A stretch of 64,000 nucleotides of DNA, taken from positions 4,960,001 to 5,024,000 of the forward strand of contig NW_024704746.1 of assembly GCF_018977255.1 (NCBI RefSeq). Reading direction: 5' to 3'. The stretch comes from Callorhinchus milii (Eukaryota). Positions 10,945-39,576 of this stretch are shown piece after piece (the first letter of the stretch is position 1; the number at the start of each line of letters is the position of its first letter). A program made the translations under genes and the position numbers. The notes under the pieces are model-generated. The model worked only from the letters and a program-made list of their open reading frames with translations, searched no databases and was not told where the DNA came from.

Positions 10945-11320
10945 AGTCACACACACACACAGCAGTGACACTAACACACTGACGAACACAGCCATGTGCG
11001 CTCACACAATTACTCACATACATGTTCCCACAGATCTTGACGGACACACATACACAGCAGTGACGCACAGCGACACACACACAGCAGTGACACACACACA
11101 CAGCAGTGACACACACACACAGCAGTGACGCACAGCACAGTGACACACACAGCACAGTGACAGACACACAGCAGTGACACACACACACACACACACAGCA
11201 CAGTGACAGCAGTGACAGACACACACAGCAGTGAAACACACACAGCAGTGACTGACACACACAGCAGTGACTGACACACACCGCAGTGACACACACACAC
11301 AGCAGTGACTGACAGATTAG
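10945..11320. repeat. (CACACACAGCAGTGA)-type microsatellite in the J-C intron
   Basis: Visible tandem array; a shorter homologue lies at 42355-42450. Confidence 0.9.
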
Positions 11321-12629: not shown

Positions 12630-13110
12630 ATTGTCTCATAGAATCATAGAGCACAGAAGGAAAGGAAGCCATTCGGACCATCCTGTCCGCTCTTTCAATA
12701 GAGCTATCCAAATCAATCCCACTCCCCTGCGCCCTCCCCATAGCCCAGCAAACTTGTCCTCCCCAAATAATACTCTACTTCTCTCTTAAAAGTTGTTATC
12801 GAATCAGCTTCCAAAACCCTTTCAGGCAATGCATTCCGTCTGGGCTGGTGCTCACTCTCCACTGGAGCTCTCTACTTGTCTGCTCTTTCCATACAACCCT
12901 TCAAAATATTTTTTCGTTAAGCCATTATGGCCATTTGTTCCACCATCTAAATTTATCTGTGTAAAACTTCTGGTTATAATCCTCAATTACTGTCTACTTG
13001 ATGGTGATCAGTGGAAATACTGTTTATTTACTCTGTGAAACTCATCAGTTTGAAAACCTCTGTCCGATTTTCACCGCCACCTAATAACCTTCTCTGCCCC
13101 CACCTGTTAT
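12630..13110 (-). mobile_element. CR1 LINE 3' fragments
   Basis: CATAGAATCATAGAGCACAGAAGG...GCCATTCGGACCATC is the reverse complement of a CR1 3' end. Confidence 0.65.
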
Positions 13111-13583
13111 GCCCTCTCATCTCTGATATTACCAAGCTAGTCCTGTCATCCCTCTGAAGCTCACAGCCCAGTGCAGTGCTGGGGGAGTGCAGCATTGTCA
13201 GACGTGCTTTCTTCCATTTAACATTTTTAAATATCCCTCGGCACTATTGGAAAAGAGAAGGGAGTTTCTCTCTCCCGATTCCTGGCTGACAATAGTCTGA
13301 ATAAAATTGGTCACTCACTTCATGGCTGTTTGTGGGACGTGCACAAATTGGCTGCCTTGTTTGCCTAACAAATTCAGTCACTGCACTTTGCAGTGCACAG
13401 TGCAAATCCTGTGAACTGCTATGAGATGTTACAATTATGCAATAAATACCATATGAAATGCCGGGATTATTATTATTGTTAGATGAGTAAGATCCTTGAT
13501 ATAAACATTCTGCTGGGTTAGGGAGTTTTGCTTTGCTTCAGGGTTTAAAGGCTTAAAAGAAAAGGTTTCCACCATGTACTCAC

Positions 13584-13618
13584 TCAGAACCAATTCTGTT
13601 CCTTTACCAAACGTGTTC
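13584..13618 (-). CDS. IGKJ: Ig kappa J segment, cluster 1 (NTFGKGTELVL)
   Basis: FGxGT motif, GTGAGT donor in phase 1, adjacent 23-RSS. Confidence 0.93.
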
Positions 13619-13657
13619 CACAGTGTTACATTACAATGATCCGCCCGTACAATATCT
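13619..13657 (+). promoter_or_regulatory. 23-spacer recombination signal sequence of J1
   Basis: CACAGTG (13619-13625) + 23 nt + ACAATATCT (13649-13657). Confidence 0.88.
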
Positions 13658-14818
13658 CAGCCTCCTCCTCCCCCACTGACTGCCCCCCCTCCCCTCTTCC
13701 CCACACACACTGCATTGGGGAAACACACAGCCTGCTCACTAGGATTTATTTAATAATAAAATAATAAACCGTGCACCTGATATCTCGCCTTTCACATGGG
13801 GAGGGCGTCTCACAGAGCTTAATAAGATATATTGTAGAGTGTAGTGACTGTGTAAGTGAACGCAGCAGCCAATTGGTGCACAGCAGCGTCCCACAAACAA
13901 ACATTAAGTGAATCCAAACATTCTCAAAAATCCATCAATTTCATATCTGGCAAAAATATTGTCCATTAAAGTGTATAAAAGTGCTCAAGCCTCTTAATGT
14001 AGATAGTTCCCGTCGCAGGAGCATTAGCAATGCATGAAATTTCACCTGGTCTCAGCCTCAGAATTCTTTATTTTAGCCACTGCTAAAACTAACTTCTCGA
14101 TCTCCCTGCCTCAATCCCTCCACCTCATCCCCTCTTTATCCATCTTTAATCACATTTTAATACCCAGCTCTGCAAGTTGTTGTTGTAATCTGTAATGTGG
14201 AGCAGTGATGGAGAATCCAGTCTGTATTTGAAAGCTGTTTGTTCCCCAGTTTGTTCAAATAAAACTGGCTGCTAAACTCAAACAGACAGACTTTCACAAT
14301 TCTTCCCCTCCGTATGTTCACAATTTGAACAGCAACAACATGAAACAGTGTAGGCAGTGAGAGAAGACAACTGAGCAGTTAGCTCCAGTGGAGGAGCGAG
14401 TAACAATACAGGCTCATGAGGGGAGGTTGGGATCTCTGAGGCTGGAACTACACAAAGCACTTGGTGAAGTGTGTAGGATGTAACTGTGTAACATTCTGTA
14501 TTAAATAACTGTTTTACTAAAAAATTCGAAACTGGTGAAATTAATCTACAACGTGTCCAGTGACAACCAGCAGCTTGGGCTGTTTCTGCCTGTACCTGTA
14601 TAGTGACTGTGTGATGGCTGTGTCTTTGTGTGTGTGTGTGTGTGTGTGTGAATGAGAATATAAGTGTGTGAATGTCAGTGCGTGAACGTGTTTGAGTGTG
14701 CCAATGTGTGTGCGTATGTGTTTGAGTGTGTGAGTGCGTACAATTGTTGAGTGTGAATGAATACGAGTCTATGTGTGAGTCTGTGAGTGTGAGTGTTTGT
14801 GAGCCTATGAATGAGTGA

Positions 14819-14846
14819 GGTTTTTGTAGGGCTGTGTATCACTGTG
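14819..14846 (-). promoter_or_regulatory. 12-spacer RSS of V1
   Basis: Minus strand CACAGTG-ATACACAGCCCT-ACAAAAACC, a perfect consensus; V-12/J-23 is the kappa configuration. Confidence 0.97.
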
Positions 14847-15624
14847 TCGCTAGAGCTCTGGTACCCCATACAATAGTAGTCAGCAAAATCCTCAGGTTGC
14901 ACGCCAGTGATGGTCATTGTGAAAGTAGTGGAGGATTGGTGACCACTGAACCGGGCGGGGGTGCCCGTATAGAGAGTTGTTGCACTGTAAATGAGAAGTT
15001 TGGGACGCTCCCCGGCTTTCTGTTGATACCAGCCAAGGTAGTTGCTGATGCTGCTACTCGCTTTACAGGTGATGGTGGCCGTTTGACCGACAGTCACTGG
15101 CAGCATTGAGGGCGTCTGTGTCATTACAAGCTCACCGCTGACACCTGTGGGGAAGAAAAGCAGGTGATAAACTAACAGCAAAATCTTCCTGTAAAATCAC
15201 AAACCCTGATCCTTACACACTTCATTCCCACCAGCAAAGACACACAGTCTCTAGAGGTTGTGGTTACAACAACAACAACAACAACAAGATTCCACTTATA
15301 GAGCGCCTTTCACGTCAGGAGGACGTCCCAAGGCGCTGCACAGTTGGGTCATGACCCGAGCAGGGGGGAAATGGTCAGGGTGAGGGGAGGGAAGGGAGGG
15401 AGAGAGGAGGGGGAAATGGTCAGGGTGAGGGGAGGGAAGGGAGGGAGCGAGGAGGAGGAAGAGAGTCGAGAGGGGAGCTGAAGGCACGGTCAAAGAGAAA
15501 GAGGCAAAGAGGCACGGTTACTCAGCTAATTCTGCACTGAGAGCGCATGTGAAGCGGGGGAGAGAGAGCGGTTACCAGCGAGCCAGAACACTACAGGCAG
15601 GAGCAGGTGGGTAGAGGACAGCAT
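14847..15624 (-). CDS. IGKV: Ig kappa leader + V segment, cluster 1 (unrearranged)
   Basis: Leader exon 15624..15576 ([16 protein letters not shown]), V exon 15144..14847 (ELVMTQTP...[20 protein letters not shown]...[14 protein letters not shown]); conserved Cys/Trp/Cys; open frame. Confidence 0.96.
15268..15515 (-). mobile_element. Truncated L2/SINE-tail insertion in the V1 leader intron with 6-bp TSD
   Basis: GGTTAC at 15262-15267 and 15516-15521; (TTG)n tail on the minus strand; absent from the homologous cluster-2 intron. Confidence 0.8.
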
Positions 15625-15673
15625 GGTGACCACGTCAGCTCTCACTGTTAATCTGCCGTTCCCTCAGCCACTG

Positions 15674-15711
15674 CTTTATACTTGCAGCCAGGCTCAGGGC
15701 TGTATGCAAAT
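15674..15711 (-). promoter_or_regulatory. Ig V promoter of cluster 1: octamer + TATA
   Basis: ATTTGCAT on the minus strand (15704-15711) and TATAAAG (15674-15680) upstream of the ATG at 15624. Confidence 0.9.
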
Positions 15712-18700
15712 GGCAGCGTATCCCCAGACACAGGGACTGGGCTCCACCCATCCTCTCCTCTCACCCTCCTCTTCACCCTCTTCTCCATTCTTCTCTTTCC
15801 CTCCTCTCCCCTTCTCCTCTTGCTTTGTCTCCTGGATTCTCTCCCATTCCCATTGATGTACCAAACAAGGGGCCAGTGTGAGATTCAATCTGAGCTCATT
15901 GTATAGGGGCGATAATCACACACATGGTCATTATTACAATTAATAATACTCCTTGCGTTTGGTATCGGATTTCACAGCAGGAGGACGGCTGAAAGCACGT
16001 CACAGGATAAAGCTTACTTTACAAGATAAAGTAGTGTTGTAGTGACTGTGTTTTTGTGAGTGATGGCTTTTGGTGCACAGCAAAGGCCCACAAACAGGCA
16101 CCAAGTTTTTTTTTGTTTGCCTTTGGTCAGCCGGCTGTCTGACACACGTGGAAACTCATCACCATGCTTAAGAGATCCAAACCAAACTGAGAATTCCATG
16201 CATCCCATCTACACATTTGGGAGGTTATCGGTCAAGAGACAGGGAGAGACTACATGACAGAATTCCAGAATTCCCCCCCATCGGGCAGCTTCTTAGATGA
16301 TTTCCTGTATCCTGGCTTTGACCACCCTCCCCGGTAACCCTGTCCCTGTCATTAATTCCCCTCCAGGTAATCAGACATGTCCTGAAATTCCGCCCAGTCT
16401 TAGGAAAATCCTGAAATCCAGTCTTGATCTGGAAGGAGGTTTAGTTTTAAGAACCCAGCTCTCAATTCAGACAATGTGACAATTCTCCACAATCTTACCC
16501 TAGTAAAGGCAAAATGGTCTCCCAGGCTAAGACTGGGGGGAATTTCAGGACTCTGCTGTTGCTTCTAAACTTGTTCCTCATGTCCCCGAGCTGTACTAAA
16601 CAGTGACTACTGTGGACAATGGAGTGGATACTGGTCTCAGTTTCTTCCCCTCAGTCTCCCCCTCGCCTTTGGATCACTCACTCTCTCATGCTTGGCCTCT
16701 CACTTCTACCCCTCTATCTCTCGCCCTCCATCCTTGCCTTCTTACCCTCAGTCTGTCTCACTCTCGGTCTCTCCCCCTCAACTCTTGCCTCCGGCCAGCT
16801 GGCTGTGCAGTTATTTACAGATGTGCACCTGCAGTGCTGGCTTCCTGTGTTGCTGTCTGTGTCTTTCCGCTCTGTGAGTTTCTGAGTTATTTTCTGTGTG
16901 GGGGATTTCAGTCTCACTGCTGGAACCTATTAATAACGGTCCCAAGTATCGCAACAACAGCAGGTGAGAACTGTAAGGGCTGAACGCTACCCTCAGTGCT
17001 GTGAGTATAGGGGTAGTGTGGAAAACAACTTTGATGTAGTTACTGACAATATTAATAATTTATGCAATGTAATTATATAAAATGTTATTTATTTAGTTAT
17101 AGGGGTTTCTTATTTAATATATAATATATACATTATATTTTTAAAGTGCAAGTTGCTTAAGCTGGATACATCAGGGCTGGCTGTTTTGTTGGACTTTAAG
17201 CAGTGTCTGAGGGCAACCGAAGTTCCTTTACTTCTTTCCTTCCTGCCCAGCAGAGGAAAGGAAGTGGCAACTCGGAGGTGATTGATAGCTGGCTCCAGGC
17301 TATCAATCAATCACAATTTGACTCCTCCTATTCCCTCCCTTGTTTCTTCCCCGTTCCTCCCCACCTCATTTATTGACCACCCGGCCAGAGCCACTTGTAG
17401 ACTGTGGTAAGGTTTCGGTGGGTTTGAAGCTGTTGAAGGTAGTCGAAGAGGATTTTGAAGGCACGAGACAAAGGGAGTTTGAGAGCAAGTTCCGGAGGGT
17501 GACTAAAGGTTAACAACTGATGGTGGGGCAGAGCGAATGAGAGTAGAGTGGTAATAATAATCCTTACATTTCATATGGCGCCTTTCACATCGGAACTTAC
17601 TGTAAAGTGGAGTGACTGTATTTTATGGACGAATGCGCAGCTAATTTGTGCACAGCAATCTTCCACAATCAGTCATGAAGTGAGTGACTGATTTTATCTG
17701 GGGGGATTGTTGGCCAGGACACCAGGAGAGAGAAACTCCCTTCCTTTTTCCAATAGTGCCATGGGATCTTTAACATCTACCTGAATGGGCAGACGTGACC
17801 TTGGTTTAACATCTCATTCAAAGGAAGGTATCTCTGACAAGGCAGTGCTCCCCCAGTTTTACACTGGAGCATCAGCCTAGAATGTGAGTTCAAATTCCCT
17901 TAGATGGGGCTTGAACCCCCAACCTCTGACTCCGAGACAAGTGACTGAGCCAGACTGATGCTTCCTCAATGTGGGGACCTGGAAGTTGATAGAAATAACC
18001 CGAACACCAGCCCAGCTAACAGCCAACCAGCGACCTGTGTAGCTCAGTGTATTTACTCACGTCAGGACTCGGAACTTACATTTCCAAAGTAGACACTGCA
18101 GTGTAGTGCTGGGGGAGAGGTACATCTGTGGAGGCGCCATCCTTTGGATGAGCAGTGCCTGTACAGCAAAGTGGGGAGAATACAGCAGAGGGACACTGGG
18201 AACTGGGAGGAATGAAACCGTGTCATTTGGGACAATCACGTTTATAATCAAACAAATTACTGGGACTGAGAACATAAGAGTCTGCTGGCGAAAGAAGACC
18301 ACGGTTCATCCAGTTCACCTTCCAACATCCTGGCAGTCGCACGACATGTTATGTCCCAAACTATATATTGTTTTCTAACAGAAAGCTATCTAATTTGTTC
18401 TTGAACAAATCAACACTTTCTGCTTTCACCGTCTCCCTGGGGAGCCTGTTCCATATGTTTACTACTCACTCACCTGAACCAAGAAATTGAATGAAATATA
18501 TCAAGACACAGAGCGAGTTCACAGGACGTGAGAACCAAGAGCCAGAGGTCAAAGACTGGTAACAAGCACTCAGAGGGATCAGACTAGCTGTGAGGCTTCA
18601 GGTTAAGGATTCTCGTTGAGGATCAAACAAAATATTCGCTGAGAAAGCTTCCAGTACATTCTGTACCTGTCTACGAGTGTGCAAGGTTGATGGGGTGGAA

Positions 18701-21831: not shown

Positions 21832-24800
21832 CTAGTCTTTCAGAAAGCGTCTCTCCCATTCAGTGGACCTCAAGGCATTGTAGACCCACAAGGTGAAGTC
21901 AGGAAACATCCCCAAGAAATATTCTTCTGGCGTTCCAACTTTCTCCTGTATCCTAAAGAAGAAAAAAAACATATTAAGCCCAATATGTTCTTCCTTCCTT
22001 AGGCCCTATTAAAAATCCTTTGACACTATTGGAAAAGAGAAGGGGACTTTCTCCTGATGTCCTGGCCAGCAATCCCCCAGATAAATTGGTCACTCATTTC
22101 ATGACTGCTTGTGGGATCTCGCTGAGTGGATGAGTGAATGACCTGTGTCTGTGCAGTGATGTTCCACGATTCTATAAGGTGCTATAAAAGATACAACAAT
22201 ATGGGATTAGGCAGATAACTCAGCTCCAACAACTTATATGCATTTATACAGCACTCTTCACATGGGAAAGTGTCTCGGAGGGCTGGCTCCAAGGGTCAAA
22301 TGGCCTCTTTCTGTGCTGTAATTTCTCTGTCTGACTGAATCTCATTGAGGCCTAATCTGCGCTTGGCCGAGTTGAGTATTGTATGAGTACAGGAAGTGGT
22401 ACAAACTGGCATCAGTCACATACTCTTTGGACTTCTCTCCCAAATGCTCTGTCAGGTTTCGTATGAGCCTCAGCAGATCGCAGGGTGTGTTTTTGAACTT
22501 TGTCTTTGAGTTCTTCTGCGGTTTCTTTTGTGCTCCCATGATCATGCAATTCAGAACTTCTTCATCAATCTGAGGGGAAAGGAAAAAGAGATGTTAAGTT
22601 TGAGTCACTGCTCTAGATTTCTATGCTTCTACTGCAATCCAAGTCCAATCTCCCCCATAGACCACCCACAGAATCTTCACCAGACCTAACCAAATAGGCG
22701 TGCGTGCATTAGATACGAACACACAGAACCAGAAAAGGACATTGTTCTCCACCTTCCATTTCTATTGAGTTGGACGGCTGTAGAGTTTGTCTTAGCGTAA
22801 CATATGTTAGGGGTAGTTGGTGTAACTTTACATAAAATGTTATGCAAAAATGAAGATATGTGTGCTTTGAAGAGTTCAATTGGTTCAGAAGCAATGTGTT
22901 TATCGCAGCTCTCATTAGTTATTGATGTAACTGCATTGTTTTAATCAGAATCAGCTCATGGATGCCAAACTAAAGGACACTCCCAGCTTGTTTAAACCAA
23001 CCAGAAAACTATCAGAAAACTACGGCTCGAGACACTCGACCATTCCAAGGTTCCAGCAACATCGGAAAAGGAAAAAAGCAAAAGAAGAAGAACTGCAACG
23101 ATACAAGAACACAGCTGGAACACAACAGCTAGACATTCAACTTTGATGCCCGTTATTACCAGCTCAACACAGCGGTTACTACTCCCACTGGCCGCTTCCC
23201 AGGATCAGAGAATTAATTCCGCTACCAGCTGTACTACTGGCTGTTCCTGCCATGCAAGAGATATTCACCTACTGCTTATGAACTCGGATATGGTCATTAC
23301 AGTAACATTGTGATAAGTCAGCATAACAGCAAATTTTGTTTGTTGTAACCCTGTCTATTGTAACTATGTTACTGAATTAATGCAACTTTTCTGCCTATTA
23401 AGTAAATGTGCTTTAAAACATAATACACAAGTGACTTTGGTTCCTCTGTTCATGGGCTCCTAATATAACATTTCGGCTAACAGAATAAGCTTTTTCCAGC
23501 CACACTTTTTCAACAGTCTTCAACAGAGTGGTTAATTCCACCTGCTATACCTTTGAACCCAATAGTGTTTCCTGATCTCTGCCAATGCCAATGTCAACCT
23601 CCTTGGCTCACGCTAGCTTGTACCTTGATCTAACCCCAATCCACACAGCCGGCTCTCCTCTCCCTCCCCACCTAGATCAAGAGTAGCTGAAGACTAACTT
23701 CATAAGACAGGAACAAATTGTGAAAGGCCATTCAGCCCATTAGGCAGTGCTTTCCAGTGTGCACAGTAGCTAGCCTCTCATGGAGTCCACTCAGTCCCTG
23801 CTTAGACCAAGACTGCTTTTCTTTCCCTCAACCACATTGCCTCCTCCGTTACCTCACTCGAAACACCACCAAAACCCTTATCCACACTTTCGTCGCTTTC
23901 AGCCCGGACTTTTCTAACGCTCTCCTTACTGATCCCGAGCTCCACAATCCATTAACTTCAACTCATCCACATTCTCACCAAACCCCACACACCCATCCCC
24001 CAGTCTTTGCCAGACTCTCAGCAGATTCTCATCTCTAGTTTGCTCCACACCCTTGCACCTCCCATCTCTCCAATTAGGTAAACAGGATGAGTCCCACCAG
24101 GGAGAGACCGTGCATTCCATACACAGGGATATTTCCCTGTGTAGGTGGCACATGTGGAATTCTCAGCCAGGCTGGGCTGTTCTGTAATCAGCAGTACATT
24201 GGAGTACTACAGACCAGCCTGGCTCAGGAACCGGACTAAGACCATCAGAGGATTGACTTGATTCCAACATTCCGTTGCTAAGCATGTCATCTTGGAGCCA
24301 GTTCAGCTCCAAGGAGGTCCCATGTTTACCACCCCCACTGGAGGACAATCATCAGTTGCTCACTTGATATTGAACAAGCACAGGTTTCAGCTCTCACAAG
24401 GTGGAACTTCCTTCGAGCTTCCTTGTTGGGCAACACAACTCAGCATGAAATACATGAGAGCATTGCCACAGCTCGGACACACATATCATCCCATTGAGCG
24501 ATATCATCTGATCAAAGAAAACCGAATTATGAAAAACAGACCTTTTCTGTCCAAGTATAGAAGGTCTTTTGTTCATCCACCTTGTCATTGAGACACAAGG
24601 TGATGGGAGTGTCTTCTTTGCGAGTTCGTACATCCTCCTCATTAGCCACTTTGTGGAGAAACCCGATCTTTCTGGAGTAACAAACAAAATACCATTACTT
24701 TAGACAATGTCAGCAATATATAGTTCAAAGGACACTATTCCTCCCCTTACCGACCCCTCACCATCCACCCTCCCCAGGCTGACTTACTCTGCTGGTTTCC

Positions 24801-27800
24801 AGAGGAATGGGTGCTGTTTGACATCACTGATGGTAGCTCGTTCTGCTGCTGGTGCCAACAGCCACTCGATCAGATGTCTGGCCTCTGCAGAAAGTAGCTC
24901 CTCCTCCAAAGATGGCCTATTACAGGCTACGTCTGCTGGGCTGCTGTAGGCATCCTTTCCTCCAGTCACCATATAGTGTAAAAGCCGTCCCAATGCCTGG
25001 AGGAAGAAGAAAAGCACTTGTGTACAAATGTATGGTTATTATATGTGCTTCAGGCTGGCAATTCTTACACGTTTGCGGCACAGTTGAACAAGCTACCAAA
25101 GAGAAGAGATACGACCAATGGAACTGTAACAATGAGTGAGGAACTGCATCAAGGGGATAAGATTGGGGAAGGAACTGCTTTAGTTGTGCACAGTAAATGC
25201 AAACAGGTTATGTTTCCCATCACCTTGGCACTAAATGTACCTTTCACAACAACAACAAAAGTGAAGACTGGTGACATACTTTAGAGTTGCGCAAAACAAA
25301 CCTGTAAATCTGCCCTAAAAAGCTCATCTTCAGTAAATGTCACAGGGGGTGATTCTTTCATCTTCTGCAAGACCTCAGAGGCCTCCCAAGTACCTTCTGA
25401 TTCTAACACCACATTCTTATTCTCATCGAAATGGACACTCGAGTCAAAATCCGCCAGACAAATCCGCTCTCCAACATCTGTAAAACCATAACAATATGGT
25501 TCATCCTGTTTATCACAGTTGGGTTATTGGACGTATAGGCAATCGACTTTTTAAAAATAAATTGAAGAGAAATTGCAAATACCGTAATGTATTATTTTTA
25601 GAGGCAACAAATTGGAGCTGACAATGAATTGTGTACAACAACAACTTGCATTTATATAGCGTCCTTCACGCCGGACGGCGTCTCGGAGCGCTCTTGGACA
25701 CAGCTCTGCTTGTGGGGCGCTACTTAAATGCAAGTTATTGTTCTTGAAGCATTTGAACGATTCTTCCTCATAGCTATGACCCTTTAGTTTTGGTTAAAAA
25801 AAATTGAACCAACTTAAAAAGTACACGTATGCGTTAAATCAGTTGATACTCCAAACAACTGCGTTCGAACAGTATTTTGCTTTTGCTTTCTTCGTTCTTT
25901 ATATGCAGCAACAATTTTTACATATAATTATGAGTAATCAATTTGGTAGCTTACTGCCAAGGGAATTCCTTGGGATATTCTAGCTGAAGACAATTTCTAT
26001 ATATTTTCTTGCATTATTTGAGAAAAAAATGTAACTGGAATTTTTCCATCTAATTTTGGATACAATCTAGAATCTTTGAACAAAAACAAAAAATAGGAGG
26101 CTCTGGTTACTATTTTAAGGAACTTAAAATGTAGACAAAGCAGAGCAGAACTGGAACCAAGAACATAGATTCAACCCTGTTGATCAACTCACAGATTTGA
26201 ACTGAATTAACTGAACAGGATTGATACAGATGAACAGGAGAACACTGGTAAAACAGAAACAATTTAATGCTTAATCACAGAAAGAACCCAAATACAGAAC
26301 CGGTTCTGGAGAGCAGAGTGAGTAAACTGAATGGGGGGGAATATTCATTGATTTAATTCTTTCAGCCAGAAGGGGCTGACGAAATGGAGATTGGTTTGAA
26401 ATTTCCCCTTGATCTGAAGATCATCATCTTAAAATGTAAGAATTTTCATTTCTTATTACACTAATCAAGGTACTCCCCACGGTTCATGTGTGAGCCTGAC
26501 CACTCCCCATCTACTGCAACACATGTGCTCTACTAGTAGAAGGTCCTATAGAGGGATAAGGATGGCCAAATTAGCCTCTTTTGAGACAAGCAAACAGCAC
26601 ACATTGGGATGTGACATAGCGAGCTCCCAATCCACATGTTGTGGCTCTCTCCACTGCACCATCAGGACTGCCTCACAATCTCAGATTTTAAAATGAAAAC
26701 AGGTAAGAGTTTTAAACCTCAACAACTATTCTTGCAGTTTGTCCATTAAACATTCAGAAAGCTTTGCCTGCGACAGCTTTGACATTAGTGGGACATCTTT
26801 AGGATGATGGTCAGAAAGAATGGTTTCACGCAAAGTTGGGAGTCCAGCAAAGCAGCTGAGAATTAATAATAAATAATAATAATTCTTGCATTTGATATAG
26901 CACTTTTCACTCTTACCCGTTTTCATTTTAAAATCTGAGCTTGTGAGGCAGCCCTGATGGTGCAGTGGAGAGCCACAACAAGTGGATTGGGGGCTCGCTA
27001 TGTCACGTCTCAGTCTATGCTGTTTGCGTGTCTCAAAAGAGACTAATCTAGCCCACCCTTGCCCCTCCATGGGACCCTCTACTGGTGGAGCACATGTGTT
27101 GCATTAGATGGAATTGAAGGCAATGCTATAAGTTTGAAGATATAATGAAAATCACCTTTCAGGACATGAGTTGGATGCAAATTCCGATGGGCAAATTTAG
27201 CTCCATGCAAAATCTCAAGAGCCTTGATCAACTCTTTCATTACATTCGGTGCTTTCTCTTTGATTTCCTCGGGATTCTGTTCTACCAATTCCTGCAGGTT
27301 ATACTCATAAATCTGCAGGCAAATATATTCGCATTGTGAGTCAGTTTCATGATGAATGTATCGTACAAACTGGCTGTGCGAGACGATCTGTTGGTGTAAG
27401 AGGACACACATTTCTCTGCGCGCTTCTTCACTGTCCTTCCGGAAGCATTTCACAGCTACTTCAGTTTCCTCATTCAAGAAACCCAAGTAGACAAATTCTT
27501 TCATTCTATAAGCCTCCAACCTGGACAGATTTAGCTTCCCGATGGGCAATGGGTGCACGTTCCTCAGAAGCTTCAGTTGTTCATGCCAACGTTGACTCCG
27601 CACTTTCCATCTTTTAGGTGATACATCTTTGTTTCCCCGCAAATCTTCATATTTCCTCAATAACGTTTGCATATCTAGGTTGTATTTTCGCCTGGCCACA
27701 CTGGCTGGTGTGTCTCCTGACTTGTTGATGCAGTTTACATCTGCTCCTTTATCACACAGTAGTTTAGCCATCGCTAGGTCATCCACCTCCACTGCTGCCA

Positions 27801-28785
27801 GAAGGGCCGTTTCTCCCTTATTATTTTTTGCATTGACGTTGATGTTTTCGTCTTTCAGGAAAAGCTTGACCAAGTCCTTTTTTTTCTTTTTTACAGCAAG
27901 AATCAATGGGGTACTTTCAGCTTCCTCACAGACATTTAGGTCTGGCCTGTGTTCCATCAACAGCTTCACCAGACTGGTATTCACTGTATCTTTCTTTAAT
28001 GCAGTGTATATGGGCGTGCCGTAGTTTTTGTCCACATGGCTAACATCAGCATCACGATCCAACAGAATTGTCACAATTGTCTCATTGTCCTCCTCCAAGG
28101 CATACATTAATGGAGTTCGGCCAAGGTTGTCCTGGGCATCGACTTCAGCTTCCATCTCATCCAACAAGATGACGACAATATCTTCATGCCCTTTACGCAC
28201 AGCATCAATCAGAGCTGTCTTTCCACCTTTTCCTAACGTCTTTGTTTCCTCATTCACTTCTCGGTGTTTGTTCACCTCAGCCTTGTTCTTAAAAAGAAAG
28301 CGTAAAGCCTCCTCTTTACCATACTGGGCAGCTTCCATGAATGCGGTAAAACCAAAGCTGTCTGCCTCATTGATATCTACTTCCAGGTCGAGAAAGGTTT
28401 GGAGCAACTTGACATTACCAACTATGGCAGCAACAATGAATGGTGTAGCTCCATTTAGTTTCTTGATTTGCGGATTGGCTCCATATTTCAATAATAAATG
28501 GACAATGTTCTCATGATTTGATTTTACAGCACTTAGCAAAGGCGACCAGCCAAAGCCCTCCATCTTATAGTCGACATCTGCTTTGCTCCTCAAGAGTAAT
28601 TCAACAAGATCTTCATAGCCATGTGACACGGCATATAATAATGGAGTTTCGAGCCCAGACACATTGTAATCCACTGGTGCACCCTCTTGAAGTAATCTTT
28701 TTGCTTCATCAAGATCAGGATTGGGAGAATTACAAAGGTCTTGAAGTTTTTTGCCAAGATTTTCCCGATCCGTATTTTCTACCAT
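21832..28785 (-). CDS. RNASEL: 2-5A-dependent ribonuclease L (ankyrin repeats, pseudokinase, KEN RNase), 803 aa
   Basis: complement(join(21832..21952,22424..22569,24542..24671,24788..24996,25302..25477,27156..28785)), 2412 nt, all GT-AG and in phase; motifs GWSPL, KKLNGATPF, GFTAFMEAAQYG, KGGKTALIDA, VAVK, LADFD, HPFLW, DLLRLIRNLTEH, EYFLGMFPDF match RNase L; intron positions match the human gene as I recall it. Confidence 0.96.
26508..27110. repeat. ~200-bp imperfect inverted repeat (arms 26508-26710 and 26909-27110) inside the first coding intron of RNASEL
   Basis: Arm A ...CTCAGATTTTAAAATGAAAACAGGTAAGAGT is the reverse complement of arm B ACTCTTACCCGTTTTCATTTTAAAATCTGAG...; homology extends to GCAACACATGTGCTC. 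Confidence 0.85.
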
Positions 28786-33560: not shown

Positions 33561-36500
33561 TTAGGGACCCCAGAATGTGGATTGGGGTAACTGCTGGAGT
33601 GTAACCACCTAAAACAGCATAGTTTGCCATTGATATCGCTGTCTGGGAAGCTTTCCCGCTGCTTGTCCAGCCTGGACCACCCTACCCGTTAGGGCTTTGG
33701 GTCCTGCCCATGAGCCGGGCTGGCTGTGCTGTATTAGCTTTCAAAAGGGAACCAGATAAATATCCAAATAACGGAGTCATTTGCAATGTTATGGGGGAAA
33801 GGCAGGTAAATGGGGCTGATTGGATTGTACTTTCAAACAACCAGCACATTCCCAATAGGCCAAACGACCTTCAGTGCTATAAACATCTAAAGTTCTAGCA
33901 AGTGGGACGATGTGAGTTACAGTAAAACAACTTTGTTGCAGTGACTGTGACTACAGCTATTGTGCCGTTGGCATGATTTTAAAAAAAACTATAACAAGAA
34001 GTGATCAAGTATAAATTTTACATTTTTACGTCTTTTGTGTTTTTGGCAGATGGCAGCACAGAATGAAGTGTGTGAAGATATCACTATGGTATGTGGATTT
34101 TTCTCCCGGCGTATCATGGGATGAAAAATCTGATATTTCATAACCAATTATATTAACAAGATTTGTCACTGGTGCATTGGAACATTCATGACACATTGAT
34201 ATTACGATTTGATGCACACCAATGGAGCCAGCTGGCTTTCTGTATGAAGGCGTAGTGAGATCACCACACCCTGTGCATTATTTTATGGACTCTCACCTGC
34301 AACAGCATAACAGGCTTTACTGTACTTTCGGCTTTCAGTGTATCTGCCCACCCCCCCATGTCTGGAACTCCAGCCCAGAGTCCCTTCACTTCGCCATAAC
34401 CATCACCTCCTTCAAGACCCGCCTCAAGACCTTCCTCTTTGGCCACTTTCCTTTGCTCCTCATCCCTCCCACCTCCAGCCTGGGTGCAAACCCTGGACTG
34501 TCCAGCACCATGGGATATCCTCCACATGAAAGGCACTGTAAATTTGTATGTAATTTGTTGCTAATTTCCCTTCAGAGGTATCATTTTTGCCTTGTTTAGA
34601 AGCAGCTTCCAACATGCTGCTGCTAAACCGATTGGAAGTTCCTTTCACGTGTGTGAAAGTGTGCAGATAATCACAGCACAAACACCAGCAAAGAGTCTCT
34701 GCTACTAGGGAACAGTGATCAATATATTTTTATTCATAGTTAAAATATACAACTTAACAATAAGTCTACTGCAGAAAATACTGTAGAAGTTTTATATCAG
34801 GCCCTAAATTACACACAAACTTGCATTCCACAATTGAATTCATATCCAAAAGGAGAGAATCATATACAGTAGTTGTAAAATGAGTGGAATATTACTGAAC
34901 AACTAACTTTAAAATATACTTTTTAAATAATAATGTATAATAATCCTTGCATTGAATACAGCACCTTACCGCATTGTTGAGATGTCTTAAAGCACTTCAC
35001 AGAATATATTGTAAAGTGGAGTGACTATATTTTATGGATAAAACTCAGCATCCAATTATGCACAGCAGTGTCCCACAAAAAATTGTATAAATATAGAGTA
35101 TTTATAGATATATGTATATATATCTATCTAGAAAGAGAAACAGGAAGAACCTTTCTGGTCTAACTGTTTGAGCAGCAGGTTACAAATGATGATGTTTAAA
35201 CAAAATCTGGATTTCACCATGATCTTCACAGTAAACGCTCTGATGTGACCTGCAGCTCACTGGTAATATTAGCAGCCAATGACCAGCTACAGGTTGTCTG
35301 TGTTGTAAATGTTGATGTGTAATTTCACTGTTCACATGTGTGTTTATAGAATATATGAGATATAGTAATAGTACTTTCATCATTTTAGGTTAGGAAGGGC
35401 TCTTTAGCCTGTTGGGCAAAGAGGCCACAAACACGTGGGTCACTGACATGAGGTGCACCACCTAATGTGATGTGAGCAGAAGCAAGCGATCAGAAGAGCC
35501 AGGTAACAGTAAGGTATGTTATGTGGACACTGGGACAAGGAACTTACAAGTTGATCTGCTGGGGCGTAGGGAGCCGGTGGAGCAAGGCGAGGGTGGGGGC
35601 TATGGGTTTGTGGAGCCTACTGCAGGAGAAGATGAAGGATGTAGAGCACCGGATGGGGAGTAGATAAGCAAGTTCTTGTTCTAGAAGAAATTCAGCAGAA
35701 TGATTGAACAACGATTTGAACTGAGATGTTTCCACTGAGATCCCCAAATAGACTGCTGTTGTTGAACTGTGTAAAAATATATATTTTTTATTTGTGGAGA
35801 GGAGGGGATTATGTGCATGGTTATTGAAATACACTCTTCTCCTGTCATTCACTGTCCTGAATCAAATGCTTGGGTGACTGACTCCCAAATTGTAGCCAGA
35901 GCCATCGAAAATCCTTCTGTCTCTGAGGAAGTGCTCGACTCACCTTAGACCAGAAAGTACAGGGGAACAGCATGCTGGGGGCTCATCACACCATTTCAAC
36001 TGGAGGGGCAGTTTATGTACAGTATTGCCATACACCAGGTGCTAAGTTGCAGGTGGAAGCCGTGCACTGGAGGATACAAATGATGAAAGATTCGGCGGGT
36101 GGGAAGACGTTGTTTGTACGGGGTCCTGCTTGCCTTCCCCTCAGCTCGGGAGGGAATTCTTGACAGACTGCAGCAACTGGCAGCATTACTTCCACTCCCC
36201 GCACATTAAGCTGCTGTAATGAGAGAACGATTCGCCGGGGAGAGAGGGAACAGGCGCTCTGAAGTTGGAAATACTTCTTGGGCTGGATGAACTCATCCCT
36301 CAAGCTGAATGTGGCCCGTGGGCCGACAGTTGGTCCACGCTGCCTTAGATGATGCGAACTCAAGTCCTGACATGGGATTTGAACACAAAACCTTCTGATT
36401 CAGGGATGAGAATATTACCACTAAACCAAGCTGACACGCAACACACTATATGTAGGAAATATAAATGTAATATACATTTATTAAATAGGAAAACCCTATA

Positions 36501-38091
36501 ATTAAATAAATAACCTTCCACCATTAGATGGCATAAATAATTATTAACATTAACTGTAACTCTAAATAGGTTTACATCAGTTGTTTTCCACATCATACTT
36601 GTAGTCACAGCACTGAGGGTAGCGTTCAGCCCTGACAGTTCTCACCTGCTGTTATTGCAACACTTGGGACCGTTATTAAAAGGTTCCAGCAGTGAGACTG
36701 AAATACCCCACAGAAAATAACCCAGAAACTCGAGAGCGGAAAGACAGACAGCAAGACAGGAAGCTAGCACAGCAGATGTACATCTGAAAATAACCACACA
36801 GCCAGCTGGCCGGAGGCAAGAGGCCGAGGGGGAGAAATGGGGTGAGACAGACTGAGACTGAGCGTGGAGGGCGAGAGTCAGTGGGGGAGAGTGAGAGACC
36901 AAGGGTGAGGTAGAGGCTGAATGATAAGGGTTTAGTGCAAGAGATTGAGGGGGATAGACTGAAACTCCATTGTCCACAGTAGCCACTGTCTGGTACAGTC
37001 GGGGTCACAGCTCAGAGACATGAGGAACAAGTTTAGCACCAACAGCAGAGTCCTGAAATTCCCCCCAATCTTAGCCTGGGAGACCATTTGCCTTTACAAG
37101 GTATACGATTGTGGAGAATTGTCACATTGTCTGAATTGAGAGCTGGGTTCTTAAAACAAAACCTCCTTCGAGATCAAGACTGGATTTCAGGATTTTCCTA
37201 AGACTGGGCGAATTTCAGGACATGTTTGATTATCTAGAGGGGAATTAACATCAGGGACAGGGTTATCAGGGAGAGTCAAGGCTGGGATACTGGGAATCGT
37301 TTAAGAATCTGCCTGATGCTGTGATCGGGCACGGTGGGGGAATTCTGGAATAATAATAGTCGTTATTCTGTCATGTAGAGTCTCCCTGTATCTTGGCCGA
37401 CAATCCCCCAAATAAAATACATCATCACTTCATGCCAGTTTGTGGGATGTTGCTGTATGCAAAAACCCATTACCCACAAAAACAGTCACTGCACTTTATC
37501 TTGTGAAGATAAGCTTTATCCGGTAAAGTGCTTTGAGACGTCCTCCTGATGTGAATCTGATATCAAATGCAAGGATTATTATTAATTATAATAAGGACCA
37601 TATATGTGATTATCACCGCTATACAATGATTCTCAGCCGGGCCCCACGTTTAGTACATCAAGTCGCTGATTACATAAAGCTCTTTATCATCTCCAATCCT
37701 CTCCCTACTTACGGAACATCGGGGCTCCAGTGACTGGGAATAGGAGAAAAGCCAGTGATAATACACAACCACGCAATTGGTTTAGATGAAGGACATCCCT
37801 CCAGAACACTCACCGTCGCACATTATGGTTACATTGACAAGTATTTGTACTAAATGGACAGTGTAGACAGAGTTTTACTCTGTCTCAAACCCATGCTGTG
37901 GCTGACTTGGGAACGTGGACGGACAATAAAGAGGGAGCTTTACTGTGTCTTTAACCCGTGACCTGGGATTATGCCTGTTCTATCCCCTGATATATTAATG
38001 ATATCCCTCATCTTGAACATGAAAAATATTCACTAAATAAAAGGGGTGGGGATGGGTGGAGCCCAGTCCCTGTGTCTGGGGATACGCTGCC

Positions 38092-38129
38092 ATTTGCATA
38101 CAGCCCTGAGCCTGGCTGCAAGTATAAAG
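38092..38129 (+). promoter_or_regulatory. Ig V promoter of cluster 2: octamer + TATA
   Basis: ATTTGCAT 38092-38099, TATAAAG 38123-38129, ATG at 38179. Confidence 0.9.
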
Positions 38130-38178
38130 CAGTGGCTGAGGGAACGGCAGATTAACAGTGAGAGCTGACGTGGTCACC

Positions 38179-38703
38179 ATGCTGTCCTCTACCCACCTGC
38201 TCCTGCCTGTAGTGTTCTGGCTCGCTGGTAACCGCTCTCTCTCCCCCGCTCCACATGCGCTCTCGCTGCAGAATTAGCTGAGTAACCACAACCTCTAGAG
38301 ACTGTGTGTCTTTGCTGGTGGGAATGAAGTGTGTAAGGATCAGGGCTTGTGATTGCACAGGAAGATTTTGCTGTTAGTTTATCATCTGTTTGTCTTTCTT
38401 CCCCACAGGTGTCAGCGGTGAGATTATAATGACACAGACGCCCTCAATGCTGCCAGTGACTGTCGGTCAAACAGCCACCATCACCTGTAAAGCGAGTAGC
38501 AGCATCAGCAAGTACCTTTCCTGGTATCAACAGAAAGCCGGGGATCGTCCCAAACTTCTCATTTACTATGGAACAACTCTCTATACGGGCACCCCCGCCC
38601 GGTTCAGTGGTCACCAATCCTCCACTACTTTTACAATGACCATCACTGGCGTGCAACCTGAGGATTTTGCTGACTACTACTGTATGCAGAGCTATAGCAA
38701 CCC
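38179..38703 (+). CDS. IGKV: Ig kappa leader + V segment, cluster 2 (unrearranged)
   Basis: Leader 38179..38227, V exon 38409..38703 (EIIMTQTP...[17 protein letters not shown]...[10 protein letters not shown]); open frame. Confidence 0.96.
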
Positions 38704-38731
38704 CACAGTGATACACAGCCCTACAAAAACC
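38704..38731 (+). promoter_or_regulatory. 12-spacer RSS of V2
   Basis: CACAGTG-ATACACAGCCCT-ACAAAAACC, a perfect consensus. Confidence 0.97.
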
Positions 38732-39502
38732 TCACACACACTGCTTCCTGCCTTCACACACACTCACTCATAGGCTCACAAACTCTCACACAGACTCACT
38801 CGTATTTATTCACACTTAACAATTATAGCTCACTCAAACTCAACATTTATAGATATACACACACACTCAAAACATATTCACACACACTCACACAACACAC
38901 AAATGCACACTTGCTCTGACAAACACACAGACAGCCATCACACAGTCCCGATACAGGTACAGGCAGAAACAGCCCAAGCTGCTGGTTGCTATAATGTTGT
39001 CACGACATGTTTCACCAGTTTCGAATTTCCTAGTAAAACAGTTATTTAACATAGAACGTTACACAGTTACATCCTACACACTTCACCAAGTGCTTTATGT
39101 AATTCCACCTCCCCCCCCCCTCACTGCCTACAAGGTTTCATATTGTTGCTCTTCAAATCATCAACTTACGAAGGGGGATAATTGTGGAAGCCCTTTAACC
39201 CAATCTAAGTTTTGAAGTTGGTTTCGTTTGAAGAAACGGGGAAAAAAAAATTCAGAATGGATTTTCCATCACTGCTCCACCTTAATACAACAACTTGTAT
39301 TTTTCCAGTGCCCTTCATATAGGTTAGCGTATTTCACCTACAAATACACAGTCACTACACTTTACAATATATCCTGTGAGATGTCCTCCCCGTGTGAAAG
39401 GCGAGGATTATTTTATTAAACCTTGGTAAGCAGGCTGTACATTTCCCCAGTACAGTATGTGTGTGTGGGGAAGGGGGCAGTCAATGGGGGAGGATGAGGC
39501 TG

Positions 39503-39541
39503 AGATATTGCACAGACGGCACATTGTAATGTAATACTGTG
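39503..39541 (-). promoter_or_regulatory. 23-spacer RSS of J2 (non-consensus)
   Basis: Minus strand CACAGTA + 23 nt + GCAATATCT. Confidence 0.8.
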
Positions 39542-39576
39542 GTGGTCGTTCGGCAAAGGAACAAAATTGGTTCTGA
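39542..39576 (+). CDS. IGKJ: Ig kappa J segment, cluster 2 (WSFGKGTKLVL)
   Basis: FGxGT motif, GTGAGT donor at 39577 in phase 1. Confidence 0.93.

What the first reader, a model, noticed from the sequence alone, without database searches (positions are those of the whole stretch)
25302..25477. RNase L retains an IRE1-length activation segment with an APE-like motif
Between DFD and the alphaF Asp (DLQ) this exon encodes 44 residues (SSVHFDENKNVVLESEGTWEASEVLQKMKESPPVTFTEDELFRA), versus about 14 in human RNase L and about 42 in IRE1. GTWEASEVL parallels IRE1 GTEGWIAPEML. The 176-nt exon is the only reading I found that keeps phase with its neighbours and preserves the DLx/xLGRL alignment. This looks like an evolutionary intermediate between IRE1 and mammalian RNase L, with a loop that could be regulated in trans.
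Basis: partly seen in the sequence, partly recalled or inferred. Interest (0 to 1): 0.75.

Follow-up and report, generated by a model that had tools for sequence, protein, structure and literature searches.

The report
Shark RNase L keeps kinase activation segment
The elephant-shark antiviral enzyme RNase L still has the full kinase "activation segment" found in its relatives such as IRE1, which land vertebrates later deleted; this is a real but modest insight into how a dead kinase domain was pared down.

Summary
Window 25477-25302 (minus strand) is a 176-nt coding exon with AG/GT boundaries. It is exon 2 of six in Callorhinchus milii RNase L (803 aa). My gene model is identical to RefSeq XP_042190828.1 and differs at two residues from UniProt V9K7E5.

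The exon encodes DFD(553-555), then 44 residues, then D600. Human RNase L has 14 residues there and human IRE1 has 42.

- All 16 cartilaginous-fish RNase L proteins examined carry the 43-44-residue segment. Its WE[AS]SE[IV]L core is nearly invariant.
- Coelacanth has 27 residues, amphibians 18-19 and amniotes 14-18.
- All 20 non-RNase-L kinase-RNase relatives checked, IRE1-like ones included, have 38-54 residues with G[TS]..W.A.E.
- A tree built with the segment masked gives one RNase L clade (100/100). The long form is therefore ancestral and was deleted inside the same exon (176 nt to 98 nt in caecilian and gecko).
- A profile built from outgroups alone aligns GT-WEASE to GT..WxAPE; 0 of 500 shuffles score as high.
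- The APE glutamate (E578) and its usual arginine partner (R655) are retained or lost together.
- AlphaFold2 predicts a confident helix starting at S577-E578.

C. milii lacks catalytic residues (HRN, N to H, DFD), so this is a pseudokinase. Regulation of the loop in trans remains untested. The gene is already known; I found no published description of the feature.

The parts
27156..28785 (-). RNase L coding exon 1 (residues 1-543 plus 1 nt). It encodes the ANK repeats, the linker, the kinase N-lobe and the catalytic loop HRNLHPTH (27166-27189).
   Evidence: ORF and splice donor AAAG|gtgatt. Pfam ANK and Pkinase matches.
25302..25477 (-). The finding: 176-nt coding exon 2 (residues 544-602). 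It encodes beta8/9, DFD, the complete activation segment and the start of alphaF.
   Evidence: AG/GT boundaries, phase 1 to 0. Identical in the RefSeq protein. Orthologous 176-nt exon in Heptranchias; 98 nt in caecilian and gecko.
25443..25451 (-). DFD (D553-F554-D555), the RNase L form of the kinase DFG motif.
   Evidence: Translation. DFD is shared by nearly all RNase L rows, while all outgroups but one have D[FM]G.
25311..25442 (-). The 44 residues S556-A599 between DFD and the alphaF Asp. The variable activation-loop half is 556-571; the conserved half, 572-599, is the P+1 loop, ASE and alphaEF.
   Evidence: Translation. Column identity among 16 cartilaginous-fish proteins is 0.63 for the N half and 0.82 for the C half. 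Against Heptranchias, pS/pN is 0.60/0.42 for the N half and 0.90/0.20 for the C half.
25374..25394 (-). G572-T573-W574-E575-A576-S577-E578: the P+1-loop GT, the conserved Trp, and the APE-equivalent A-S-E.
   Evidence: Aligned to G[TS]..W.A.E of 20 outgroup proteins. Column identity is 0.955 over residues 573-583 among the 16 cartilaginous-fish proteins.
25353..25379 (-). Predicted alphaEF helix (S577-E585).
   Evidence: AlphaFold2/DSSP helix 577-585; block pLDDT 88 (residues 571-580) and 83 (581-590).
25302..25310 (-). D600-L601-Q602, holding the alphaF Asp, which is invariant across RNase L and the outgroups.
24788..24996 (-). Coding exon 3 (residues 603-672): alphaF to alphaI of the C-lobe. 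It includes R655 (24838-24840), the subdomain-XI Arg that canonically pairs with the APE Glu.
24542..24671 (-). Coding exon 4: start of the KEN (RNase) domain.
   Evidence: Pfam Ribonuc_2-5A match at residues 674-800.
22424..22569 (-). Coding exon 5: KEN domain with the catalytic motif LIRNLTEH (R752, H757).
   Evidence: R752 and H757 are invariant in 41 RNase L proteins.
21832..21952 (-). Coding exon 6 and the stop codon.

Best explanation
[quoted passage not shown] It encodes a complete protein-kinase activation segment: DFD, a variable activation loop, a P+1 loop (G572-T573-W574), an APE-equivalent A576-S577-E578 that opens the alphaEF helix, an alphaEF-alphaF linker, and the alphaF Asp (D600).

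The segment is inherited from the kinase-RNase (PK-KEN) ancestor that RNase L shares with IRE1. All cartilaginous fishes keep it under purifying selection. In the lobe-finned lineage it was removed by in-frame deletions inside the same exon: to 27 residues in coelacanth and to 14-19 in tetrapods.

Shown here: the exon, its homology to the outgroup segment, the polarity of the change, and the selective constraint.

Inferred: how it works. The domain is a pseudokinase. All RNase L proteins have DFD and His in place of the catalytic-loop Lys, and C. milii also has HRN and His in place of Asn. The segment therefore most likely acts as a structural element of the C-lobe rather than as a catalytic switch. 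In canonical kinases the APE Glu forms a salt bridge with a subdomain-XI Arg (PKA E208-R280; my own knowledge). I infer that E578 pairs with R655 in the same way and so stabilises the scaffold that holds the RNase dimer together. A regulatory role for the variable half of the loop is possible but has no evidence.
For: Gene model: six AG/GT exons give 803 aa, identical to RefSeq XP_042190828.1. UniProt V9K7E5 differs at 2 residues.

Family: Pfam domains. Pig and human RNase L are the best solved relatives, with a gap of about 31 residues exactly at query 563-595.

Distribution: 16 of 16 cartilaginous-fish RNase L proteins have 43-44 residues. Coelacanth has 27, caecilian 18, axolotl 19 and amniotes 14-18. 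Twenty outgroup PK-KEN proteins have 38-54 residues.

Polarity: on an IQ-TREE tree with the segment columns removed, RNase L is one clade at 100/100, cartilaginous fishes at 100/99 and lobe-finned vertebrates at 96/94. All outgroups are long.

Homology of the segment: IRE1 aligns through it in one stretch. An outgroup-only HMM puts GT--WEASE in match states. The native score is 255.5 bits against 240.0 +/- 3.9 for shuffles, with 0 of 500 reaching it.

Co-retention: E578 and R655 are both present in 14 of 14 cartilaginous-fish rows and in 19 of 20 outgroup rows. Both are absent in 12 of 12 lobe-finned rows. The HRD Arg is kept in 14 of 14 against 1 of 12.

Structure: in the AlphaFold2 model (mean pLDDT 89.2) the segment blocks score 83-94. 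It predicts a strand at 565-568, a helix at 577-585, a strand at 589-592 and a helix at 593-612.

Exon orthology: 176 nt in Heptranchias with the same ATGTTG...TTACAG|gt ends; 98 nt in caecilian and gecko with the same phases.

Selection: for codons 572-599, pS is 0.90 and pN is 0.20.

Function of the protein: C. milii RNase L co-expressed with its OASa impairs yeast growth and shortens mRNA, and this depends on the RNase catalytic site (Chu et al. 2023, PMC10400998).
Against: No coordinates were available, so the E578-R655 contact, and any contact between R534 and the loop, are inferred from sequence covariation and general kinase knowledge. They were not measured.

The AlphaFold2 alignment held only 41 sequences.

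Polarity rests on outgroup comparison. With only two RNase L subclades, a gain in cartilaginous fishes costs the same number of steps inside the clade. It is excluded only by the homology evidence.

The coelacanth 27-residue form comes from a predicted protein. A second model of the same gene (H2ZU23) is shorter, and I could not fetch the locus.

I saw no RNA-seq junction counts. That V9K7E5 is transcript-derived is my own knowledge of that UniProt series.
Confidence: 0.8

Rival explanations
1. The retained loop is a working regulatory switch. In cartilaginous fishes RNase L output would be gated by phosphorylation of the activation loop in trans, by residual autophosphorylation in elasmobranchs, or by a partner protein that docks on the loop, as in the IRE1 kinase-to-RNase coupling. 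This adds to the homology explanation rather than replacing it.
For: The HRD Arg, which in RD kinases binds the loop phosphate (my own knowledge), is kept in 14 of 14 cartilaginous-fish proteins but in only 1 of 12 lobe-finned ones. Most elasmobranchs have Ser or Thr two to three residues before the G of GT (SSPGT, SSQGT, TPGT), where C. milii has E-S-E. Elasmobranchs keep the HRD Asp and the catalytic-loop Asn.
Against: All RNase L proteins, cartilaginous ones included, have His for the catalytic-loop Lys, and nearly all have DFD for DFG. C. milii also lacks the catalytic Asp and Asn. The Ser/Thr position is not conserved: catsharks, Mustelus and Carcharodon have SCKA or SGKA, and Chiloscyllium has CPGT. 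The N half of the loop is the least constrained part. No phosphorylation data exist.
Confidence: 0.12
2. The 30 extra residues are an insertion specific to cartilaginous fishes, and their resemblance to an APE motif is chance or convergence. On this view the short tetrapod form is ancestral for RNase L.
For: Inside the RNase L clade alone, one gain and one loss are equally parsimonious. The motif is ASE rather than APE, and GT is directly followed by W, without the two residues seen in outgroups.
Against: All 20 outgroup proteins are long and carry the same motif in the same register. An outgroup-only profile scores the native order above all 500 shuffles. The partner Arg R655 and the HRD Arg go with the segment. 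The coelacanth keeps the C-terminal T-E-E-E-L...D-I-Q piece but not the middle, which is the pattern expected from partial deletion. AlphaFold2 predicts a canonical helix at the ASE.
Confidence: 0.04
3. The long reading is a gene-model artefact, arising from a wrong donor or retained intronic sequence, and the real protein has a short mammal-like loop.
For: An in-frame internal GT with a passable donor context exists at 25373 (GAG|GTCTTG).
Against: RefSeq and the UniProt V9K7E5 protein use the 25302 donor. The downstream 24 codons are conserved in 16 species, with saturated synonymous change. The same 176-nt exon is present in Heptranchias. The 25373 donor would delete the invariant alphaF Asp.
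Confidence: 0.01
4. The gene is not an RNase L orthologue. It would instead belong to the separate vertebrate ANK/PK-KEN family seen in lungfish and teleosts, so its long loop would say nothing about RNase L.
For: NCBI names the elasmobranch proteins '2-5A-dependent ribonuclease-like'. The lungfish/teleost family also has a long loop with W-x-A-x-E.
Against: The gene is monophyletic at 100/100 with coelacanth and tetrapod RNase L, and the branching follows the species tree. It shares the derived DFD and the Lys-to-His change. It has the same six-exon structure and phases as caecilian and gecko RNase L. The residues that contact 2-5A in human RNase L (W60, K89, F126, E131, Y135, R155; my own knowledge) are conserved as W80, K109, F146, E151, Y155 and R175. 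It is functionally coupled to OASa in yeast (PMC10400998).
Confidence: 0.02

Closest known systems
Mammalian RNase L (human 4OAU/4OAV, pig 4O1O/4O1P)
   Same: It has the same ANK, pseudokinase and KEN architecture, DFD in place of DFG, and His or Gln in place of the catalytic-loop Lys. The residues that contact 2-5A in human RNase L are conserved, as are the RNase catalytic Arg and His. The intron positions match. Best PDB matches are E 1.5e-131 and 2.7e-117.
   Different: The shark protein has 44 rather than 14 residues between DFD and the alphaF Asp, which restores the P+1 loop, an APE-like ASE and alphaEF. It keeps the subdomain-XI Arg and the HRD Arg. It has one more ANK repeat (residues 232-271). 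C. milii has Asn for the HRD Asp and His for the catalytic-loop Asn, both of which mammals keep.
IRE1 (human ERN1, yeast Ire1)
   Same: Both have the kinase-KEN module. The activation segment is of the same length class (42 residues in human IRE1) and the same order of elements: GT(xx)W-x-A-[PS]-E-[MLV]-L, then KE[NS]P, T[YF]T and D-[IL]-x-[SA]-x-G. The subdomain-XI Arg is present. In the fold search, the kinase-KEN part of the model matches phosphorylated apo IRE1 6W3C with a TM-score of 0.75, normalised to the target.
   Different: The shark protein has no luminal sensor or membrane span and carries ANK repeats instead. Its catalytic residues are degenerate, and nothing suggests autophosphorylation. 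It has Ser for the Pro of APE, no two-residue spacer between GT and W, and a linker from alphaEF to alphaF that is 7 residues longer.
Other PK-KEN proteins: lungfish/teleost ANK-PK-KEN (Protopterus XP_043924037, Myripristis, Oncorhynchus, Sardina), Lingula 'ppk4-like', and the tandem PK-KEN proteins of the soft coral Xenia
   Same: These were the nearest outgroups to RNase L in my tree. All have long activation segments with G[TS]..W.A.E. The sardine protein reads GTECWEATEVL, close to the shark's GTWEASEVL.
   Different: They keep HRDLKPxN and DFG, so they look like active kinases. They lack the residues that contact 2-5A in RNase L. Their functions are unknown.
Coelacanth RNase L (XP_006014049)
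   Same: It is an RNase L orthologue, has DFD, and shares the conserved end of the segment (TEEELKNEDIQAIG against TEDELFRADLQALG).
   Different: Its segment has 27 residues, with the GT-W-A-S-E core and the partner Arg already lost. This looks like a second step between the shark and tetrapod states. It is a predicted protein and was not checked on DNA.

Membership tests
RNase L (2-5A-dependent ribonuclease) | N-terminal ankyrin-repeat sensor carrying the residues that contact 2-5A | tested here: met
   Pfam ANK families score 1.5e-55. W80, K109, F146, E151, Y155 and R175 align without gaps to human W60, K89, F126, E131, Y135 and R155; in 41 RNase L proteins W80, E151 and R175 are invariant and K109 and F146 nearly so, while Y155 is not on either list. 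Which human residues contact 2-5A is my own knowledge of the published structures.
RNase L (2-5A-dependent ribonuclease) | Central protein-kinase-like domain with pseudokinase substitutions | tested here: met
   Pkinase match at residues 433-667, E 6.4e-16. It has DFD and His for the catalytic-loop Lys, as other RNase L proteins do, plus HRN and His for Asn in C. milii.
RNase L (2-5A-dependent ribonuclease) | C-terminal KEN/Ribonuc_2-5A domain with the catalytic Arg and His | tested here: met
   PF06479 match at residues 674-800, E 3e-16. R752 and H757 are invariant.
RNase L (2-5A-dependent ribonuclease) | Orthology: a single clade with bona fide RNase L | tested here: met
   The RNase L clade has 100/100 support with the activation-segment columns removed, and the topology follows the species tree. 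The six-exon structure is shared.
RNase L (2-5A-dependent ribonuclease) | RNase activity dependent on OAS/2-5A | not testable with these tools
   Reported for C. milii RNase L with C. milii OASa in yeast by Chu et al. 2023 (PMC10400998).
RNase L (2-5A-dependent ribonuclease) | Truncated activation segment without an APE motif, as in the solved mammalian structures. This is a feature of the described members, not a defining one. | tested here: not met
   The segment has 44 residues with GT-W-ASE, against 14 in human and pig. This is the respect in which the shark protein is a variant.
IRE1 | Luminal stress-sensing domain and a transmembrane segment N-terminal to the kinase | tested here: not met
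   The N-terminus consists of ankyrin repeats. The protein groups outside the IRE1-like clade, which has 100/99 support.
IRE1 | Catalytically competent kinase (HRD Asp, catalytic-loop Lys and Asn, DFG) | tested here: not met
   C. milii has N535, H537, H540 and DFD.
IRE1 | Full-length activation segment with P+1 loop and APE, followed by a KEN domain | tested here: met
   Single-stretch phmmer alignments to yeast and human IRE1 run through the segment. KEN domain present.
Canonical eukaryotic protein-kinase activation segment (DFG...APE) | Bounded by DFG-like and APE-like motifs about 20-35 residues apart, with a GT in the P+1 loop | tested here: met
   D553 to E578 spans 26 residues, with G572-T573 present. 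The motifs sit in match states of an outgroup-only profile.
Canonical eukaryotic protein-kinase activation segment (DFG...APE) | APE Glu paired with the subdomain-XI Arg | tested here: inconclusive
   In sequence the two are present or absent together almost without exception. The contact itself could not be measured because model coordinates are not returned.
Canonical eukaryotic protein-kinase activation segment (DFG...APE) | An alphaEF helix begins at the APE motif and leads into alphaF | tested here: met
   AlphaFold2/DSSP gives a helix at 577-585 and alphaF at 593-612, with block pLDDT of 83-94. This is a prediction only.

The most novel reading that the evidence does not exclude
In cartilaginous fishes the RNase L pseudokinase may keep a working activation-loop switch. 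The HRD Arg would bind a phosphorylated Ser/Thr just upstream of GT in elasmobranchs, where C. milii has Glu residues that could mimic phosphate. RNase output would then depend both on 2-5A and on phosphorylation by another kinase, or on a viral or host protein docking on the loop. If so, IRE1-style coupling of kinase to RNase persisted after the 2-5A sensor was acquired and was lost only in lobe-finned vertebrates.
Probability: 0.1. Interest if true: 0.7.

Novelty: new variant of a known kind. Interest (0 to 1): 0.42.

Why it matters
[quoted passage not shown] This finding orders the steps by which an IRE1-type kinase became that scaffold:
1. The catalytic-loop Lys and the DFG Gly were lost on the RNase L stem.
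2. The activation segment and its Glu-Arg anchor survived in cartilaginous fishes for the whole history of that lineage.
3. The segment was then deleted stepwise in lobe-finned vertebrates.

This offers natural 'before' and 'after' proteins for asking what an activation segment does in a kinase that no longer phosphorylates anything, and whether it affects dimerisation, nucleotide binding or RNase output. A yeast assay for the elephant-shark protein already exists. The insight is evolutionary and structural in scope. It does not change what is understood about the pathway.

Tried and rejected
- **Internal intron.** I considered a short intron inside the exon, from GT at 25393 to AG at 25315. 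It would be 79 nt, which is not a multiple of three, so I rejected it.
- **Alternative donors.** I listed every in-frame GT in the exon. Only GAG|GTCTTG at 25373 resembles a donor, and using it would delete the invariant alphaF Asp. No database protein uses it.
- **Structure papers.** I tried to read the two RNase L structure papers (PMC3974923, PMC4731867) for their description of the activation segment. Neither is held.
- **Supplement.** The supplement of Chu et al. 2023 is not held, so I cannot exclude that their alignments show the segment without comment.
- **Profile search.** The second search with the search for homologous proteins was swamped by bird sequences and returned no coelacanth or amphibian proteins. 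The search of 50%-identity representatives supplied them instead.
- **Coelacanth locus.** The exact coelacanth protein is not on record in the contig index, so its exon was not checked on DNA.
- **Fold search.** The full-length model search gave only global scores. TM-scores to RNase L are low (about 0.45-0.53), most likely because the single-chain model arranges its domains differently from the crystal structures; this was not checked. It says nothing at residue level about the loop.
- **Literature.** Searches for 'RNase L' with 'APE motif', 'activation loop', 'shark' or 'cartilaginous fish' found no description of this feature.
Full report
**What is at the coordinates**

The feature lies on the minus strand. 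Read that way, 25477-25302 is preceded by ttttacag and followed by gtttgt. In the frame that starts two bases in, it translates without a stop to VGERICLADFDSSVHFDENKNVVLESEGTWEASEVLQKMKESPPVTFTEDELFRADLQ.

I built the whole gene from open stretches and splice signals. The six coding exons are 28785-27156, 25477-25302, 24996-24788, 24671-24542, 22569-22424 and 21952-21832. All have AG/GT boundaries. Their phases fit, and together they give 803 residues.

Pfam finds ankyrin repeats, a protein-kinase domain (residues 433-667) and the Ribonuc_2-5A (KEN) domain (residues 674-800). The best solved relatives are pig and human RNase L, at E 1.5e-131 and 2.7e-117.

The protein is in public databases as Callorhinchus milii (elephant shark) '2-5A-dependent ribonuclease'. 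RefSeq XP_042190828.1 is identical to my model over all 803 residues. UniProt V9K7E5 differs only at N178S and C698R. To my knowledge V9K7E5 belongs to the transcript-derived series from the elephant-shark genome project.

**The observation**

Exactly 44 residues (S556-A599) lie between DFD (553-555) and D600. HMMER alignments to pig and human RNase L break into two pieces at query 563 and 595, so about 31 residues have no mammalian counterpart. Chain coordinates give 14 residues for human RNase L. The alignment to human IRE1 gives 42.

Of the in-frame internal GT dinucleotides, only GAG|GTCTTG at 25373 looks like a donor, and using it would delete the invariant alphaF Asp. A GT...AG pair inside the exon would remove 79 nt and break the frame.

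**Is it general?**

All 16 cartilaginous-fish RNase L proteins I collected have a segment of 43-44 residues. They comprise one chimaera and 15 proteins from sharks, rays and skates, two of them from a single sawshark species.

Among these proteins the mean column identity is 0.735. It is 0.63 in the first 16 residues of the segment, 0.82 in the last 28, and 0.955 over TWEASE[IV]LQK[LM].

The same exon exists in the sevengill shark Heptranchias. It is 176 nt long with the same ATGTTG...TTACAG|gt ends. Between the two species, codons 572-599 show saturated synonymous change (pS 0.90) but few replacements (pN 0.20). Codons 556-571 are much less constrained (pS 0.60, pN 0.42). A loosely constrained loop followed by a tightly constrained P+1/APE region is what I would expect of a kinase activation segment (my own knowledge).

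**Which state is ancestral?**

A profile of the kinase-KEN region was searched against 1.84 billion representative proteins. Named cluster members followed. The segment lengths were:
- coelacanth RNase L, 27 residues;
- caecilian 18 and axolotl 19;
- amniotes 14-18;
- twenty non-RNase-L kinase-KEN proteins, 38-54 residues. These were IRE1-like proteins, cnidarian tandem kinase-KEN proteins, Lingula 'ppk4-like' proteins and a lungfish/teleost ANK-kinase-KEN family. All carry G[TS]..W.A.E in register with the shark's GT-WEASE.

An IQ-TREE tree was built on the kinase-KEN alignment with the segment's own columns removed. It gives a single RNase L clade (100/100). That clade splits into cartilaginous fishes (100/99) and lobe-finned vertebrates (96/94). 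Coelacanth is basal in the latter, and every outgroup has the long form. The long form is therefore ancestral.

The orthologous exon is 98 nt in the caecilian and the gecko, with the same phases. The shortening was thus an in-frame loss of 78 nt inside the exon, not a shift of a splice site.

**Is the resemblance to IRE1 homology?**

Four independent lines say yes.
1. phmmer aligns yeast and human IRE1 to the shark kinase domain in one uninterrupted stretch through the segment. It pairs W-x-A-x-E-x-L, KE[SN]P and T[FY]T.
2. An HMM built only from the 20 outgroup proteins places GT--WEASEVL in match states. The native sequence scores 255.5 bits. It scores 228.6 with the segment deleted and 240.0 +/- 3.9 with the 44 residues shuffled. 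None of 500 shuffles reaches the native score.
3. In canonical kinases the APE glutamate pairs with an arginine in subdomain XI (PKA E208-R280; my own knowledge). Both residues (E578 and R655 here) are present in 14 of 14 cartilaginous-fish rows and 19 of 20 outgroup rows. Both are absent in 12 of 12 lobe-finned RNase L rows. The HRD arginine follows the same pattern, at 14 of 14 against 1 of 12.
4. AlphaFold2 (41-sequence alignment, mean pLDDT 89.2) predicts the segment with block confidences of 83-94. It gives a short strand at 565-568, a helix at 577-585 that starts at the S-E of ASE, a strand at 589-592, and alphaF from 593. By my knowledge of canonical kinases this is the usual order: P+1 loop, APE/alphaEF, alphaF.

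**What it is not**

It is not an active kinase in this species. C. milii has HRN for HRD, His for the catalytic-loop Lys, His for the catalytic-loop Asn, and DFD for DFG. It also has a glycine-rich loop four residues shorter than in elasmobranchs.

The Lys-to-His and DFG-to-DFD changes are shared across RNase L, although some birds and mammals have Gln, and the axolotl Cys, at the Lys position. They therefore predate the loss of the activation segment.

Elasmobranchs keep the HRD Asp and the Asn, and most have Ser or Thr just upstream of GT. This leaves a small opening for a regulated loop. That position is not conserved, however, and there are no data.

**Mechanism**

- Shown: the exon, the homology of the segment, the polarity of the change, and purifying selection.
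- Inferred: the segment works as a structural part of the pseudokinase C-lobe, anchored by E578-R655. It would support the scaffold on which 2-5A-driven dimerisation activates the RNase. Lobe-finned vertebrates would have remodelled the C-lobe so that it became dispensable.
- From the literature: the protein itself is functional. Chu et al. 2023 (PMC10400998) showed that synthesised C. milii RNase L with C. milii OASa impairs yeast growth and shortens mRNA, and that this depends on the RNase catalytic site. Their main text does not mention the activation loop.

**Novelty and verdict**

The gene, its annotation and its pathway function are known. A complete activation segment in cartilaginous-fish RNase L, its stepwise deletion (44, then 27, then 14-19 residues), and the joint loss of the Glu-Arg pair and the HRD Arg do not appear in the literature I could search. 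I could not see the supplement of the one relevant paper.

I rate it a new variant of a known kind and of moderate interest. It is tidy and well supported, and it suits structure-function work on pseudokinases. A specialist who knows that RNase L descends from an IRE1-like kinase would not find it very surprising.

Noticed in passing
window 9456-17140 and 36457-44047: A large inverted duplication (arms of about 7.7 kb, 79-98% identical in pieces) brackets the RNase L gene. Each arm carries immunoglobulin light-chain-like ORFs: V at 14675-15181 (-) and 38390-38773 (+), and C at 10568-10912 (-) and 42585-42929 (+). RNase L therefore sits between two mirror-image light-chain clusters.
   Followed up: partly
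window 27973-28092 (residues 232-271): All 16 cartilaginous-fish RNase L proteins have an extra stretch of about 38 residues in the ankyrin domain, the size of one more repeat. Coelacanth and tetrapod RNase L lack it. The HMMER alignments to pig and human also break here. No outgroup was available to tell whether it was gained or lost.
   Followed up: partly
window 27166-27189 (residues 533-540) and the Gly-rich loop around residue 428: C. milii alone among the cartilaginous fishes sampled has HRN for HRD and His for the catalytic-loop Asn. Its glycine-rich loop is also four residues shorter. All elasmobranchs keep HRDLHP[TS]N. The chimaera pseudokinase is thus more degenerate at the nucleotide and catalytic site, which raises the question of whether it still binds ATP.
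   Followed up: partly
window 28254-28252 (residue 178) and 24711-24709... (residue 698, exon 4): The window, which equals the RefSeq protein, differs from UniProt V9K7E5 at two residues, N178S and C698R. These are presumably allelic differences between individuals.
   Followed up: no
related proteins P0139, P0143, P0144, P0146 (not in the window): Lungfish and teleosts have an uncharacterised family with a kinase-KEN module; the three longer members (908-928 aa) have ankyrin-like N-termini by eye, while the 578-aa sardine protein does not. It keeps HRD[LI]KPQN and DFG, plus a W-x-A-x-E loop. This family, grouped with two Lingula proteins, was the nearest outgroup to RNase L in my tree, at modest support (84/38 and 89/35). 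Ray-finned fishes lack RNase L itself (PMC10400998), so this family may deserve study.
   Followed up: partly
coelacanth proteins P0278 and P0131 (not in the window): Two models of coelacanth RNase L disagree at exactly this exon. XP_006014049 has 27 residues and ends EDIQ|AIGNLL, matching the conserved intron position. H2ZU23 lacks 13 of these residues. The shorter model probably uses a wrong donor.
   Followed up: partly
window 156-480, 40914-41237, 45820-46143, 54833-55141: A dispersed repeat of about 320 bp is present in at least four copies, 76-94% identical. It is probably a SINE-like element.
   Followed up: no
window 2001-4000: This block has unusual composition: GC 0.69 with a strong negative GC skew (-0.52), against about 0.45 GC elsewhere.
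   Followed up: no
window 54216: This is the only N in the window. It was left as it is.
   Followed up: no
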